Shown here: in pieces, positions 41,080 to 50,002 of the stretch
Position numbering within the stretch: position 1 is the first letter of the stretch
How the letters are laid out: every line of letters begins with the position of its first letter
Assembly (NCBI GenBank): GCA_023515725.1
Contig: JALDTO010000164.1
Coordinates: forward strand, 62,001-126,000
Reading direction: 5' to 3'
Length of the DNA: 64,000 bases
DNA from: Amoeboaphelidium protococcarum X5
Lineage: Eukaryota > Fungi > Aphelidiomycota
The notes under the pieces: model-generated
What the model was told of the DNA's origin: nothing
The model's database searches: none
The model's input: only the letters and a program-made list of their open reading frames with translations
Position numbers and translations under genes: made by a program

Positions 41080-41310
41080 GTAATGAGCGGTTGATTAAGG
41101 AATTGTCTTGAGGGGTATTAATGCAGATAGAAATAACAAGTTGAAATTTATATAATTTTTGGTAATACTCGATTCATGTTCAACTTGGCCTTTTAAGAGC
41201 TATCGTAATCAGTCAATCTCAAACGATGTAACCTCAAAGTTACAGTACGGTATATTGTGCTTGTATATTAAGCACATGGCAAATATTTTTACTTCATTTT
41301 AGCTATAAAA

Positions 41311-42149
41311 TCATCGACGCGATTTGAATCCACCATGTGCAGACGAGCCAAACCCGCGACCATTTCTATAGCTGCGTGTAATGGAACTCAGGCGCCAAGC
41401 ATCCTTGTCTTCAAACTTCTTATGCAAAGGCTCAATCTTGTCACCTTTACGCTTTCTTCCCAGCTCATGTCCACTCAGAGTTTTGTAGTAATTAGGCGCC
41501 AATTCGATAAGCCACTTGGGATCGACGAGGGACACTTCGCGCATATATTCCTTAGTTGTGAGAACGAGATCATGATAGATTACCCACTGCGGCTACCGCT
41601 AAAACAGAGAGGAGGATGGATGCATGAATACAACGGTGTTATCAGTCAGTTTCTTGTATCCTTCAGTCATGTGCTTCTTGGCAACATTTCTAAAGAATCC
41701 AGCAGTGATCGCTTTGCGGACTTTAGTAAAATCCTTGCCACAGGACTGAATCTAAATTTTGCACCGATCCATAATCTCAATCAACTGGCGGCGAACATCT
41801 TGAGCCTTTTGCATAGTCTTGTACTGAATATAATTATCAAAACACCATTTATCCTAGAATCCAGCCGCTTTCCAGCTGTTGTATACACAGAGTAATGTCA
41901 GATGATCTCCCTCCGGTTAGCTGAATTTCTACTTTTTCTAATCGGCCTCAGATAGCTTGTCTTTGGGTCGATAAAATACATTCTACACGCTCAGCATAGC
42001 GATTATTTTTAAAATCTCTTCTGTGCACTAAAACATTTCACTGGCAATCAACGTTTTGGACAGCTGCGGCTCAAGAGGAAATTCGGCCATTCTACGACCG
42101 ATCGGAGTGATGAAGCCTTCTTCGTCCAGAGCCCCAATAGAGTATAATA
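41311..42149 (-). pseudogene. PRP22: PRP22/DHX8 DEAH-box splicing helicase, 3' part, downstream of the copia insertion
   Basis: [30 protein letters not shown]...EGDHLTLL...HPSS...[15 protein letters not shown] to TGA. Confidence 0.95.
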
Positions 42150-42269
42150 TGTTAAAAACGTAATAAGTAGAAAATAAATAATAACCAATTATTGTTATTT
42201 CTACTTCACTTGAAGAAGTAGTTTGATCATTTTTCACTGACGTTGTACGTGTTTCGTCACAACCTAACA
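42150..42269 (-). repeat. 3' LTR (120 bp)
   Basis: Identical by eye to 47375-47494. Preceded on the minus strand by a short purine-rich tract AGGCGAAAG (candidate PPT). Confidence 0.97.
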
Positions 42270-42295
42270 CTTTCGCCTGAGGATATACGTGCAAC

Positions 42296-45200
42296 TCAAC
42301 AGCGACTTTAATCTAGACCCAATCTGGCAACATGTCTTCGGAATAGCGTAGGAGTCAGCGGCTTGGTTAGAACATCAGCAGTCTGCTCCTACGTATTCAC
42401 ATATTCAAACATAACGCGGCCGCTTTCAGTTAACTCCCTGACAAAATGATACTTAACTTCGATATGCTTAGTTCTGCTAAACTTCTCCGGATTCTTTGTA
42501 ATGGCAATACAACTCTGGTTGTCTTCCATAACTTTAAGTGGATGAACCTTCACTCTATCAACAGTTTCTTCATCAGCTAACAACCTTAGCCCATCAACCA
42601 CAATATCGAGCCCTACTTCATTCAGAATCTCCCTAAACCAGCACAGCTCTTAACACACAGCAGCAGCGGCATAGTACTCTGCTTCAGTGCTACTTAACGC
42701 AACTGCACTTTACAACTTGGACTTCCAAGAGATACTAGCGCCACACATTTGAATTACATAGCCGGTGGTAGACCGCCTTCCCTCTTAATCGTTAGCAAAG
42801 TCTGCATCGGCATAAGCAATGGGAAGCAGATCTTTCTTCCCATCGAAAATCAAAACAAGATCTTTACTACCAGCCAAGTATCGCAGGACCCTTCTGACCA
42901 TACTGTAGTGTTCCATCTTAGGATTCGACAGATATTTACTTAAGTAACCAACAACGAATGCAATGTCGGGACGCGTACCCACCATAAGATACATCAATGA
43001 ACCAATCAACGCTCTATAAGAAACATCCAAGAAACCATCATCAACATCAACGTTAATCGCCTAAAGACTCATGGGTGTTGAGACTCCAACACAGTTGTCC
43101 GCTTCAAAGCGAGTAAGAACACGTTCCAGGTAAGTGCGTTGATCTAATTAGATAATCTTCTAAGGCATTGACCTCTTGATCCGAATCCCAACAATATGCT
43201 CAGCAGGACCTAAATCTTTCATGTCAAAACGCTGAGCCAGCTGTGCTATGACGGCATCAATATCTGATTAGCGCTAAGTAATTAAAAGAATATCATCGAC
43301 ATAGAGCACTATCATAAATAATCTACCGTGCTTGCGCCTGATGTAAAGACAATTGTCGGCATGGCTTCTCTTGAAACCAATCTCGACAAGAAACTAATGA
43401 ATTGTATTGTTCCAGCATTTCGGTGCTTATTTGAGCCCATAAAGACTTCTCAGTAGACGCAGTATCTGACCTTCAAATTCGGTACCCACAGGCCCTTTCA
43501 TGTAAATCTCCTCATTCAGTATTCCGTTTAAAAACGCAGTATTTACATCCATTTAATGGATTATCATATCATACTTTGCAGCTATAGCAATTACCATCCT
43601 AATCGTGTTAAACTTAGCCACCGGAGCAAATGTCTCGGTGTAATCAACATCCTTCACTTGACGGAATCCTTAAATAACTAATCGAGCCTTGAATCTCTCC
43701 ACCTACCCACTGGAATCAAGCTTGATCTTAAAAACCCATTTGCAAGGGAGCGCTTTAAAGCCTTATGGCAGAATGGACCTTTTCCAAGTCCCATGTTTAA
43801 GAAGACTCCTCAACTCATCCTCCATCGCAGCCTTCCACTGCGGCCATTCTTTAAGTAACATAGCCTCTGCAACGGTCTTAGGAGTCACAGGTATGTCTGA
43901 GCCACAATAGATTTCATTGAATAGACAAGTCACATCATACGGCATCTCTTCAACCTCAAGCTTAGAGAGATAGCATTGAACAAAGTCATCAATTAGTTCG
44001 TTTATCTTCACCTGAGACGAGAGTGCCTTGATATCAGCCCGTGTGTTCATGTCGATTTTGAGTTCTTCAACCAGGCGTTTGAGTCTCTTATTCACCAGAG
44101 CGTCTTCCTCATCCTCTTGCTCTTCACTTTGCTCTAAAGGATTAGACTCTGCACTGATATTACGCAGGCGACGACTGATTCGCTTACCACCAACTTTAAG
44201 ACACGCAGATCTCTGTTATATAGCTTACACATTCGTCGCGTCTGCATCATCCCTCACATTCACATTAGGCTCTTAATCATTCACATTCACATTAGGCTCT
44301 TAATCATTCGCATTCACATTAAGATCTTGAACATTCACATTCACATTCTCTTACGGCACATTCGAGCCCGATACTTACACATTCACTTAAGACACATCAC
44401 TTTAAGTGTTCACATAAACATCATCTACCAAACCGGTAGGCATAACATCAACATCATCACTTCCGCCCACCTCCATCTGAGGATTTGGCGTATGTTAATC
44501 ATTGTCATGCACATTGGTCTAATCTACATGTCTTTCGCCCAAAGTGGAGCGCATATTATCAGAGCTTTCGCCGCATGAAGAACGGGATTAATCTGGATTC
44601 TATGTCAAGTCACAAGAGGTGCTGCTTTCGCCCAACATCAAACCAGATTCCGACTATGTGTCTGAGAGATCTGGAGGATAGAACGATTCATACATCAAGT
44701 CAAACTCCTAGGCACCATAAGTCTAACGTGCAACCTCGTGAAAGACGACTTCATCAAAAGGAACATCGAGTAATGAATTTTAAGCAGTGAGAATCTGATA
44801 ACCGCTTGGTCTATACCCAATGAAATGACCTTTAGCAGTACGACTAGAGAATTTGAATTTATCAGCTCTTGCTTCTTTAGGTACGAAGTACGTAACGGGA
44901 CAGCCCCAAATTCTCAAATGATTGTAGCGCGGTTAGCTCCCATGGTATACTTCGTACGGTGTTATTTACAGTTATCCGGCGGCATTACGAGCACTTGTTA
45001 AAACTCTATTCGCCACATATACATAAGCCTGCACTGCAAGGCCCCAATATCTTCTGGGCAACCCACTGGATAGTAACATACTGCATACACCTTCTACAAT
45101 CCGACGATTATATCTTTCAGCTACTCCGTTCAACTAAGGTGTATATCTAGGCACCATATCTAAAAGGATTCCATAATCACGACAGAATCCTTTAAGATCT

Positions 45201-47326
45201 TAGTTCACAAACTCAGTACCTTAGTCGCATTTTAGAGTGTTGATCTTCTCACCAGTTTCCACGTTCATTCTAGCGTTAAGCACTTAAATGGCCGAGGATG
45301 CTTAATCTTTGCTGTACAACAATTCCGCCCATGCATAGCCTGAGTAGTCATCTACTATAGTCAAGATGTAGGATTACTTCTGAGGTGTTTGAATGCCAAT
45401 GGGACCGATGAGATCCGCATGAAGCATATAAAGAACACGAGGTGTCCGTAGAGGCATCTCTTTCTTGTCCCACCGAGAATCTTTCCGTTTAGAAAAATGA
45501 GCGCGAGTAGCTTTCGCTTGCAGACAGGGATCACAGTGATCTATTTAATCAAAGTCGATGTCATGGCTAACTTATCCTAACATATCTAGTCACACCATTT
45601 TCTTCACGATTCCCTTGCTAGGATGTCCGAGACGTTCGTGGATGGTCTTAGCATTGATACTTGCTGACAGACTGACTACATCTGCCTCGCTCTTACTTTG
45701 ATCATCAGACTTGTGACGCTTCGGATCACTGCCTTCGGATTGATGAGACTTGGGCCAGATCACCTTGATGTCCATAACATACAATCCATCAAAACGTCCA
45801 GAACTCATTTTCTAACCAGTTGCAATACATTCTCCATTTTGGTAGATTTTCTTCATGCCTTCCCCAAATACCACATACATTTTCTTGTCATCAACCGGCC
45901 CAACAGGGAATAAATTAAAGGAGAAGCTAGGAGAGTACAAGACGTCCTCAACAGTGGCAATGGTTAGTTTACCTTGGTCATTACGCATTTCAAACTATAT
46001 GCTGCCTCTACCTACCACGGTAACCAAAGTGCTATTATCAATAGTGGTGCAAACAGCAGAACAATCTTGGTAATTGTACAACCAGTCTTTTCTACACGTA
46101 ACAAATTTGTTGCAACCTCCATCACTTAACCAGACATTCTGGTTGTCTAGAGCAGTAGAGTCAATAGCCGCATTGAGGGTCATGACGTGAGTCACTAGAG
46201 ACACAAAGTTAGCGTCTTCAGCACTTTGAGCAACATTAGCACTGAACTTGACTTTCTTTATGCCATGACTTTAATCTTTGTCTCTAGGTATTAAGTGAGC
46301 AGGACGTTTGTGCTCAGCACCTCCACCAGGCCAGTAGCATTCTTCAGCAGTATGGTTCGCTTTCTTGCAGTTAGTGCAGTACTTGCTACTACTCCCGCCT
46401 GTAGAGAATTACTGCTTGCGATTACCTTTAAACGAAGCTCCTTACTTAACCATTGCATTAGCTTACACAGATTCAGTAGACTCACCACCAGATTAACGTA
46501 AGGCTTGTATCTGGCGCTATAGCTCAATACTAGTCAGAGTGTCCATCAGATCCGCGGTAGTCAGAGGCTTCTTTAAGTAAGTGGAAACGTTGTCCAACGC
46601 GCGGATATCGCCATACGTTGGGCCCTACGGTAGCTTATCTAAGAACTTCTAGGCTAGTTTTTACTCCGAAATAGAAGTATCTCCACACTTCTACATCTCC
46701 TCAACAATCGTTCTCATCGCAAATAGAAGTTTCACTGAATGATTGAACTGTTGGAAGGTGAGACTTTCCAATTGTTCAGCAAGCAGGCCAGAGTGCTTAG
46801 GAGACTTAGCGTTCCAATATGCCTCCACTGCTTATACTGCTTCATACGCGTACTTGCACTTGATGATGATATATCTCAGCTGAGGTTCGATGGAATTCTC
46901 GATAATTGCCAGAGCTTTGCTGTTCATTCCCAAAACTTCCGAAATCACCTTATGCTTATCCAGACTTGAAGATCCACCTGAAGATACGGACTGTACAGAG
47001 GACGGGACTACATCCTTTCTAGCTCCACCTTACTTTCCAACGTCACCTCTCTATGCACTACTATCGGGAGCTGCCTGATTAACGGCTGACGCGTCCGTTC
47101 CGACGGAGACGACGCGAGTTTGGCTGGCGCTATCCAGATTAGACAAGAGATTTGCATAATAGTCTTCAACAGAGCCAAGCTTCTTGATCTCTTTGTACAC
47201 CTTCTTACCCAGCACCGCGTCCACCTTCTTCTCTCTGGCTTAAGTGAGTAACGACTTGTGCCAGGCAGTGAAATTAGGGCCGCAAAATATCGTTCCATGA
47301 TACGCATCGTCCTTGCTGCTGTCCAT
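42296..47326 (-). CDS. Copia Gag-Pol polyprotein, 1677 codons, with one internal TGA at 45590-45592
   Basis: Zinc knuckle [14 protein letters not shown]; protease WLSDGGCN; integrase HERLGH...[32 protein letters not shown]; [29 protein letters not shown]; RNase [26 protein letters not shown]. Manual scan found only one in-frame TGA. Confidence 0.93.
44255..44346. repeat. Degenerate 27-bp tandem repeat (CACATTCACATTAGGCTCTTAATCATT) in the IN-RT linker of the copia element
   Basis: Two near-perfect units plus degenerate copies; encodes NDQEPNVNV-like repeats on the minus strand. Confidence 0.75.
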
Positions 47327-47363
47327 ATTAGCTTTTGATAGAACCTGATATGATATGATAAAT

Positions 47364-47374
47364 TGAAGTAGAAA
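47364..47374 (-). promoter_or_regulatory. Primer-binding-site position of the copia element; self-complementary rather than tRNA-type
   Basis: TTTCTACTTCA directly follows the 5' LTR, lacks the TGG of a tRNA 3'-end PBS, and is the exact complement of TGAAGTAGAAA at 47433-47423 inside the LTR. Confidence 0.7.
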
Positions 47375-47494
47375 TGTTAAAAACGTAATAAGTAGAAAAT
47401 AAATAATAACCAATTATTGTTATTTCTACTTCACTTGAAGAAGTAGTTTGATCATTTTTCACTGACGTTGTACGTGTTTCGTCACAACCTAACA
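47375..47494 (-). repeat. 5' LTR (120 bp)
   Basis: Identical by eye to 42150-42269. Confidence 0.97.

Positions 47495-50002
<2,508 letters not shown>

What the first reader, a model, noticed from the sequence alone, without database searches (positions are those of the whole stretch)
47364..47494. A Ty1/copia retrotransposon that appears to prime its own reverse transcription
Seen: on the element strand the 5' LTR ends ...TTTTAACA and is followed with no spacer by TTTCTACTTCA (47374-47364). This is not a TGG-type tRNA PBS. It is the exact reverse complement of TGAAGTAGAAA inside the LTR (47433-47423), and pairing extends to 12 bp if the last LTR base is included. A primer made of those 11 nt would have its 3' end exactly at the LTR boundary. 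Established: fission-yeast Tf1 primes this way; the first 11 nt of the transcript anneal to the PBS and are released by RNase H cleavage. To my knowledge this is described only for Tf1-like Ty3/gypsy elements. This element is clearly copia (IN before RT; SLYGLKQAP, ADVLTK). Inference: tRNA-independent self-priming arose independently in a copia lineage, and transcription starts at or very near 47433.
Basis: partly seen in the sequence, partly recalled or inferred. Interest (0 to 1): 0.92.

Follow-up and report, generated by a model that had tools for sequence, protein, structure and literature searches.

The report
Self-priming copia retrotransposons in an aphelid
A jumping gene of the Ty1/copia type carries, at the spot where a tRNA primer normally binds, an 11-base exact complement of its own repeat; four related families in the same genome do the same with different sequences, so the element very probably primes its own copying, a trick already proven in yeast Tf1 and predicted for one plant copia lineage.

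Summary
TTTCTACTTCA (47374-47364, minus strand) abuts the 120-nt 5' LTR. It is the exact reverse complement of TGAAGTAGAAA (47433-47423) inside that LTR (chance about 1e-4).

Four other copia families in this genome have the same layout:
- They share only 27-47% integrase identity with each other and with this element.
- The five families use four different primer/PBS pairs.
- Every LTR site starts with TGA and lies 52-77 nt before the LTR end.
- In three families the match is exact. The one family D copy examined has a mismatch in its own 5' LTR, which other LTR copies of the family lack.

None of the 76 genomic copies of the 11-mer lies in a tRNA gene. None of the 49 tRNAs tested pairs over more than 7 nt. 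In two families only 13-14 nt separate the LTR from the gag ATG.

Tf1-like self-priming is therefore the best explanation (about 0.75). The transcript start at 47433 and the RNase H cut remain untested, because only contigs were available, not raw RNA reads.

Self-priming was already predicted for the plant TAR lineage of Ty1/copia (89% of 203 elements, PMC6317226). This is a new member of a known kind, in Amoeboaphelidium protococcarum, which reads UAA/UAG as Gln. First readers of this scan flagged the same signature on other pieces of this genome.

The parts
47375..47494 (-). 5' LTR, 120 nt, TG...CA
   Evidence: 100% direct repeat with 42150-42269. Its ends are confirmed by solo and 3' LTR copies with target duplications.
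47434..47494 (-). Predicted U3 (61 nt). It holds an A-rich TATA-like motif GTGAAAAAT at 47462-47454, about 27 nt upstream of the predicted start.
   Evidence: Inference from the position of the primer site. The same GTGAAAAAT motif lies 23 nt upstream of the primer in family B.
47440..47446 (-). CTACTTC in U3, the inverted partner of GAAGTAG in the primer site
   Evidence: Families F (6 nt) and B (5-6 nt) have an analogous short inverted repeat just upstream of their primer. Function unknown.
47423..47433 (-). Predicted self-primer TGAAGTAGAAA, proposed to be the first 11 nt of the transcript
   Evidence: Exact reverse complement of 47374-47364. Conserved in diverged solo LTRs. The transcript start itself is not shown.
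47375..47422 (-). Rest of predicted R-U5 (48 nt). It holds an internal hairpin and a second partial PBS-like copy, TTTCTACTT, at 47398-47390.
47364..47374 (-). Primer-binding site TTTCTACTTCA, directly after the LTR
   Evidence: No tRNA complement.
47327..47363 (-). Leader between the PBS and the gag ATG (47326-47324)
   Evidence: No tRNA complement of 8 nt or more.
42296..47326 (-). gag-PR-IN-RT-RH polyprotein frame, 1673 codons when UAA/UAG are read as Gln. One in-frame TGA at 45592-45590; terminal TGA at 42298-42296.
   Evidence: RVT_2 match.
42270..42278 (-). Purine-rich tract AGGCGAAAG just upstream of the 3' LTR, the likely plus-strand primer site
   Evidence: Assigned by position only.
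42150..42269 (-). 3' LTR, 120 nt
47495..47499 (-). Target-site duplication TATTA (other copy at 42145-42149). The insertion lies in a coding exon of a DEAH-box (PRP22-like) helicase gene.
   Evidence: Empty-site contigs.

Best explanation
The element is an apparently recently active Ty1/copia retrotransposon of Amoeboaphelidium protococcarum that primes its own minus-strand DNA synthesis, as fission-yeast Tf1 does. The proposed mechanism has five steps. (1) Transcription starts in the middle of the 120-nt LTR, at or next to the T of TGAAGTAGAAA (47433). (2) These first 11 nt fold back over the 48-nt R-U5 remainder and pair with the PBS TTTCTACTTCA that abuts the LTR. (3) The element's RNase H cuts after about nt 11, leaving a 3' OH exactly at the LTR/PBS boundary. 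(4) Reverse transcriptase extends this primer through U5-R. (5) During plus-strand synthesis the PBS is copied back from the primer, so primer and PBS stay perfectly complementary while drifting in sequence. Shown: the exact, boundary-anchored complementarity; its recurrence with different sequences in related families; and the absence of a tRNA partner. Inferred: the transcript start, the cleavage, and the copying of the PBS from the primer.
For: (1) Exact 11-nt (12-bp) complementarity anchored at the LTR boundary, with chance about 1e-4. (2) The same layout occurs in four other copia families of the same genome, which share only 27-47% identity in the integrase region. Family B (L143): LTR 1763-1916, then TTTATTCTCA, which pairs with TGAGAATAAA at 1858-1867, 59 nt before the LTR end. 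Family F (L145): LTR 1526-1685, then TCTATTGATCA, which pairs with TGATCAATAGA at 1609-1619. Families A and D: PBS TTTTATCCTCA/G, which pairs with TGAGGATAAAA. That site is found in family A's 3' LTR and its other 5' LTR, in family D's 3' LTR, and in three solo LTRs. Chance values for B and F are 4e-4 and 3e-5. (3) In every family the duplex starts at the T of a TGA and ends at the LTR/PBS junction. The next bases on either side cannot pair, except one extra A-T pair in C and A/D. This is what a primer that is the RNA's 5' end would give. (4) A-rich TATA-like motifs lie 23-36 nt upstream of each TGA. (5) No tRNA alternative was found. None of the 76 genomic copies of the 11-mer is in a tRNA gene. 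The best anchored pairing among 49 distinct tRNAs is 7 nt including G-U pairs. Nothing of 8 nt or more matches anywhere in the leader. (6) In B and F only 13-14 nt lie between the LTR and the gag ATG, leaving no room for another PBS. (7) The primer-PBS stem is the minimum-energy fold of the predicted 5' leader in all three families folded (z -4.4, -2.6, -3.5). (8) The family looks recently mobile: four copies are 100% identical over 195 nt, the LTRs are identical, and public runs hold an empty allele of the insertion site.
Against: No transcript 5' end, strong-stop cDNA or small RNA was seen. The only runs found are assembled contigs of unknown kind. The three-duplex 'pretzel' that Tf1 needs (bioRxiv 10.1101/2022.12.06.519325) was not found. 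With longer context the primer-PBS stem stays in the minimum-energy fold of families C and B but not F, and z-scores fall to background. The tRNA set tested is incomplete: 49 sequences, with Asp, Leu, Pro and Val missing. U3 would be only 61 nt, which is very small for a promoter. Family G lacks the signature.
Confidence: 0.75

Rival explanations
1. The LTR-PBS complementarity is a structural stem of the 5' leader with another job, such as packaging, dimerisation, or hiding the gag start codon. Reverse transcription would then be primed by something else.
For: The stem is the minimum-energy fold. In families B and F it ends 3 nt before the gag AUG, so it could gate translation. Fungal GalEa copia elements have a conserved hairpin in place of a PBS whose role is unknown (PMC5445492).
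Against: Any primer must anneal exactly at the LTR boundary, and that is where the complement ends in all five families. No other candidate primer exists. In B and F there is no room for a separate PBS. Perfect matches over 10-11 nt, with sequences that differ between families, are what copying the PBS from the primer would give. Selection for a stem would tolerate G-U pairs and mismatches.
Confidence: 0.12
2. A host tRNA, tRNA half or other small host RNA is the primer, as in Drosophila copia, Ty5, Osser (half tRNA-Met) or Bianca (half tRNA-Ile).
For: Half-tRNA priming is common in Ty1/copia and gives PBSs without TGG (PMC6317226). The tRNA set tested here is incomplete.
Against: None of the 76 genomic occurrences of the 11-mer lies in a tRNA gene, and its frequency equals the reversed-pattern control. 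The best tRNA pairing is 7 nt with G-U pairs. Four different PBS sequences would need four different host primers, each of which also happens to be present in that family's own LTR.
Confidence: 0.05
3. The element primes itself, but differently from Tf1. For example, the primer is cut out of an internal site of a longer transcript, or the 5' end of one packaged RNA primes the other RNA in trans.
For: The transcript start is unknown. The Tf1 pretzel was not found. Extra PBS-like copies in U3 (47446-47440) and U5 (47398-47390) suggest alternative pairings.
Against: The sharp 5' limit of the duplex at TGA in all families, together with a TATA-like motif 23-36 nt upstream, fits a 5'-terminal primer best. 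An internal primer would need two cuts.
Confidence: 0.08

Closest known systems
Tf1/Tf2 of Schizosaccharomyces pombe and the Tf1/sushi group (Ty3/gypsy chromoviruses), whose self-primed reverse transcription is experimentally proven
   Same: The PBS lies directly after the 5' LTR, has no tRNA match, and is complementary to 11 nt inside the LTR. In Tf1 those are the first 11 nt of the mRNA, cut by RNase H between nt 11 and 12 (PMC7175516). The primer length here, 10-11 nt, is the same.
   Different: The superfamily differs: here it is Ty1/copia, with IN before RT and an RVT_2 reverse transcriptase. The LTR is 120 nt. The three-duplex pretzel was not found. There is no experimental evidence here.
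Plant TAR lineage of Ty1/copia (including Houba and Osr-1), with self-priming predicted in silico
   Same: These are Ty1/copia elements without a tRNA PBS, predicted to self-prime: 89% of 203 elements (PMC6317226, supplementary file 5; text).
   Different: The hosts are land plants, whereas this host is an aphelid (a fungal relative) with a UAR=Gln genetic code. TAR elements average 6.3 kb. The relationship between the two lineages was not tested here, so independent origin remains open.
Fungal GalEa copia elements with a Conserved Hairpin Site in place of a PBS (PMC5445492)
   Same: They are copia elements of the fungal side of the tree that lack a tRNA-type PBS, and they carry a conserved structure exactly where the PBS should be.
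   Different: The GalEa site is a palindrome plus a local hairpin, and its authors found no LTR sequence complementary to it. Here the partner is clearly inside the LTR and the PBS is not palindromic.
Half-tRNA-primed copia elements (Drosophila copia, Ty5, Osser, Bryco, Bianca)
   Same: Their PBS does not start with TGG and lies directly after the LTR.
   Different: Their PBS matches an internal part of tRNA-Met or tRNA-Ile. No tRNA match was found here.

Membership tests
Ty1/copia (Pseudoviridae) LTR retrotransposon | RVT_2-type reverse transcriptase and the domain order gag-PR-IN-RT-RH | tested here: met
   PF07727 match at E 3e-68 on window 43070-43789. The translation shows the IN zinc finger and DD35E core before the YVDD reverse transcriptase motif.
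Ty1/copia (Pseudoviridae) LTR retrotransposon | LTRs with TG...CA ends and a 5-bp target duplication | tested here: met
Tf1-like self-priming retroelements (by mechanism) | The PBS abuts the 5' LTR and is complementary to about 11 nt within the same LTR | tested here: met
   11 of 11 nt exact, chance 1e-4. Repeated in families B, F, A and D with other sequences.
Tf1-like self-priming retroelements (by mechanism) | The complementary LTR site is the very 5' end of the transcript | not testable with these tools
   Only contigs of unknown library kind were available. Indirect support comes from the duplex always starting at TGA, with a TATA-like motif 23-36 nt upstream.
Tf1-like self-priming retroelements (by mechanism) | No tRNA complementary to the PBS | tested here: met
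   The tRNA set is incomplete, but the exact-match search covered the whole genome.
Tf1-like self-priming retroelements (by mechanism) | Three-duplex 'pretzel' RNA structure around the primer-PBS duplex | tested here: inconclusive
   The central duplex plus a U5 hairpin are predicted. No third duplex was seen, and the fold is not robust in family F with longer context.
Tf1-like self-priming retroelements (by mechanism) | RNase H cleavage between nt 11 and 12 releases the primer | not testable with these tools
   This needs biochemistry.
Tf1/sushi clade (by descent) | Ty3/gypsy chromovirus with RT before IN and a chromodomain | tested here: not met
   IN precedes RT and the reverse transcriptase is RVT_2. 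The element works like Tf1 but is not a member of its clade.
Plant TAR lineage of Ty1/copia | Phylogenetic placement of RT/RH/IN within TAR | not tested
   No named TAR reference sequences could be obtained.

The most novel reading that the evidence does not exclude
A whole clade of Ty1/copia elements in an aphelid acquired Tf1-style self-priming independently of both the Tf1/sushi gypsy group and the plant TAR copia lineage. The clade comprises at least five families that have diverged to 27-47% integrase identity. It primes with a 10-11-nt 5'-terminal primer that starts with UGA and sits in LTRs of only 120-160 nt. The PBS is rewritten from the primer in each cycle, which would explain the perfect but family-specific complementarity.
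Probability: 0.35. Interest if true: 0.6.

Novelty: new member of a known kind. Interest (0 to 1): 0.5.

Why it matters
Self-priming frees a retrotransposon from host tRNAs. It has been proven by experiment only in Tf1. A second copia lineage with the signature, outside plants, would suggest the trick evolved repeatedly or is older than thought. The five families form a natural compensatory-mutation series: four primer/PBS pairs in one genome. That series makes the mechanism directly testable by 5' RACE and strong-stop cDNA sequencing in a culturable organism. The layout also predicts transcription start sites and a minimal promoter in 120-nt LTRs, which would help annotate transposable elements in aphelid and early-fungal genomes.

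Tried and rejected
- tRNA priming, rejected. An exact search for the 11-mer over the whole genome gave 76 hits against 72 for the reversed control, none in a tRNA gene. The 49 distinct tRNAs from 63 RF00005 hits were tested for anchored, unanchored and whole-leader pairing, and nothing exceeded 7 nt.
- Chance, rejected by shuffles.
- RIP or decay as the reason for the many in-frame stops, rejected. All 59 are TAA/TAG at Gln-like positions, there are no frameshifts, and suppressor tRNAs with CUA and UUA anticodons exist.
- RNA evidence for the transcript start, not obtained. The one run search found only Logan contigs of unknown kind. One contig ends exactly at 47433, but 62 nt equals two k-mers of 31, so it may be an assembly break.
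- Relatives outside this genome, inconclusive. A 91-aa RT piece found full-length relatives in an ENA metagenome contig (L147) and a Logan contig (L148). Neither holds both LTRs, and no boundary-anchored inverted repeat could be assigned.
The look-up of the NCBI protein of family D was withheld for this genome.
- Lin and Levin 1997 (PMC1369541) is not held.
- Family G shows neither the signature nor a tRNA match.

Full report
**Observation**

The element lies on the minus strand at 42150-47494 (5345 nt).
- Its LTRs are 120 nt (47494-47375 and 42269-42150), 100% identical, run TG...CA, and are flanked by the 5-bp duplication TATTA.
- The 11 nt after the 5' LTR, TTTCTACTTCA (47374-47364), are the exact reverse complement of TGAAGTAGAAA at 47433-47423. 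This site sits at LTR positions 62-72, 59 nt before the LTR end.
- One more pair (A 47375 with T 47422) gives 12 bp.
- Solo and 3' LTR copies elsewhere in the genome, each with its own target duplication, confirm that the LTR ends at 47375. The 11-mer is therefore internal sequence at the place where a PBS must lie.
- From LTR composition, such an anchored match is expected 1.0e-4 times. It appeared in 3 of 20,000 shuffles.

**What the element and the genome are**

- Under the standard code the element looks full of stops. All coding sequence is nevertheless in one frame, with 40 TAA and 19 TAG at positions where copia proteins have Gln (for example SLYGLK-Q-AP), and only one in-frame TGA.
- The genome encodes tRNAs with CUA and UUA anticodons, so UAA and UAG are sense codons here.
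- RVT_2 (PF07727) hits the element at E 3e-68. The order is gag-PR-IN-RT-RH, so it is a Ty1/copia element.
- Proteins found with a 91-aa RT piece include NCBI entries of Amoeboaphelidium protococcarum. Their contig lengths (921293, 389574, 543554, 2509496) equal contigs C192, C57, C162 and C264 of this assembly, which identifies the organism.
- Four copies of this family are 100% identical over the 195 nt of LTR plus leader.

**Not a tRNA primer**

- The PBS does not begin with TGG.
- TGAAGTAGAAA occurs 76 times in the genome, against 72 for the reversed control. About 20 of these lie in copies of this element. None of the 76 sites is in a tRNA gene.
- 63 RF00005 hits gave 49 distinct tRNAs. 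The best pairing anchored at the LTR boundary is 7 nt including G-U pairs. The best unanchored Watson-Crick run is 6 nt. Nothing of 8 nt or more matches anywhere in the 48-nt leader.
- The tRNA set is incomplete: Asp, Leu, Pro and Val are missing.

**The decisive evidence: related families**

RVT_2 finds about ten copia families in the genome. I obtained the 5' halves of five of them and mapped their LTR ends from 3' LTR and solo LTR matches.

| Family | Locus | LTR | Sequence after the LTR | Complementary LTR site | Distance before LTR end |
|---|---|---|---|---|---|
| C (this element) | window | 47494-47375 | TTTCTACTTCA | TGAAGTAGAAA, 47433-47423 | 59 nt |
| B | L143 | 1763-1916, ends TTAACA | TTTATTCTCA | TGAGAATAAA, 1858-1867 | 59 nt |
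| F | L145 | 1526-1685, ends TCTAACA | TCTATTGATCA | TGATCAATAGA, 1609-1619 | 77 nt |
| A | L142 | ends at 1509 | TTTTATCCTCA (1510-1520) | TGAGGATAAAA | 52 nt |
| D | L144 | 1277-1429 | TTTTATCCTCG | TGAGGATAAAA (family), 1370-1380 | 60 nt |

- The partner TGAGGATAAAA is present in family A's 3' LTR, in the 5' LTR of its second copy, in family D's 3' LTR, and in three solo LTRs.
- Family D's own 5' LTR reads TGAAGATAAAA, one A-C mismatch. The two LTRs of that copy are only 92% alike, so it is an old copy.
- Family A's C233 copy has a 5' LTR truncated by an unrelated 1473-nt repeat.
- Chance values for B and F are 3.8e-4 and 3.0e-5.
- The families share only 27-47% identity in the integrase region.
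- Family G, the most distant (23-28%), lacks the signature.

So five of the six families examined keep the layout, with four different sequence pairs. This is compensatory covariation on a large scale.

In all five families the duplex begins at the T of a TGA and ends at the LTR/PBS junction. The neighbouring bases cannot pair, except one extra A-T pair in C and A/D. In B and F only 13-14 nt separate the LTR from the gag ATG, so nothing else can be the PBS.

**Mechanism**

The simplest reading is Tf1-like self-priming. In Tf1, the first 11 nt of the mRNA pair with the PBS, and RNase H cuts between nt 11 and 12 to make the primer (PMC7175516).
- Here the primer would be the 5' end of a transcript that starts at 47433.
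- A-rich TATA-like motifs lie 23-36 nt upstream of the TGA in families C, B, D and F. C and B share GTGAAAAAT.
- Folding the predicted leaders puts the 5' end on the PBS in the minimum-energy structure of C, B and F (z -4.4, -2.6, -3.5).
- In Tf1 the primer stays on the minus strand (title of reference 61 in PMC6317226). If plus-strand synthesis then copies it back into the PBS, that would explain why each family's pair is perfect yet family-specific, and why mismatches appear only in an old copy (family D). This step is inference.

**Limits**

- No transcript start could be measured. The only runs found are Logan contigs of unknown kind.
- Those contigs do show an empty allele of the insertion site, at depth 20.
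- They show one PBS variant: 47364 T>C on the plus strand, which turns the last pair into U-G.
- One 233-nt contig stops exactly at 47433. Since 62 nt equals two k-mers of 31 and the depth is 2.3, I do not count it as evidence.
- The three-duplex pretzel that Tf1 requires was not found. With longer context the fold is not robust in family F.

**Comparison with what is known**

- It was proposed for the plant copia families Houba and Osr-1, and predicted for 89% of 203 TAR-lineage Ty1/copia elements (PMC6317226).
- Fungal GalEa copia elements lack a PBS and have a hairpin instead, but no LTR partner (PMC5445492).

This finding is therefore a new member of a known kind: the first such clade I can find outside plants among copia elements, in an aphelid. 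Whether it shares ancestry with TAR was not tested. Relatives from other sources (L147, L148) did not contain both LTRs and gave no answer.

**Earlier notes of this scan**

First readers flagged the same self-priming signature on other pieces of this genome. I reached families A, B, D and F independently of those notes, and I did not check which note corresponds to which family.

**Verdict**

Self-priming is the best explanation, at about 0.75. The exact start site and the cleavage remain unproven. The novelty is moderate.

Noticed in passing
window 45590-45592 (minus strand); L142:3103-3105; L143:2926-2928; L145:2705-2707; L146:3076-3078: Five of the six families have one in-frame TGA splitting the polyprotein, in a genome where UGA is the only stop. 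In C and A it lies inside the integrase zinc finger; in B, F and G it lies just before the protease. In four of the five it is followed by C (TGA-CTA-G in this element). Family D is degenerate at that point. This looks like programmed UGA readthrough setting the gag to pol ratio.
   Followed up: partly
window 41300-50000; G000:C136:58586-59388: The element sits in a coding exon of a DEAH-box PRP22-like helicase gene. A 95% identical second copy of that gene lies on contig C136, and public runs hold an empty-site form at depth 20. The insertion is therefore probably in one homeolog or allele only.
   Followed up: partly
whole window and genome: TAA and TAG are sense codons (Gln) here. tRNAs with CUA and UUA anticodons were found among the RF00005 hits.
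   Followed up: yes
window 47440-47446 and 47390-47398 (minus strand): Two further partial complements of the primer lie in the LTR: CTACTTC in U3 and TTTCTACTT in U5. Families F and B also have a 5-6-nt inverted repeat just upstream of their primer, and the family D consensus has CCTCA...TGAGG. The function is unknown; it could be an alternative pairing or a protein-binding palindrome at the start site.
   Followed up: partly
L142:1-1473 (G000:C233:287800-289272): An unrelated repeat of about 1473 nt is present in more than 20 copies at 99-100% identity across the genome. One copy truncates the 5' LTR of a family A copia element. It is probably a very recently active transposon and was not identified.
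   Followed up: no
L144:1026-1277 (G000:C192, C235, C244, C211): A tandem array with a period of about 177 nt lies next to the family D element. Long arrays of it also occur on C235, C244, C211 and downstream on C192, so it is satellite-like DNA.
   Followed up: no
window 47433 (run X2): A 233-nt public contig carrying the element's 3' internal end plus LTR positions 1-62 stops exactly at the predicted start site. It may be a k-mer artefact (62 = 2 x 31).
   Followed up: no
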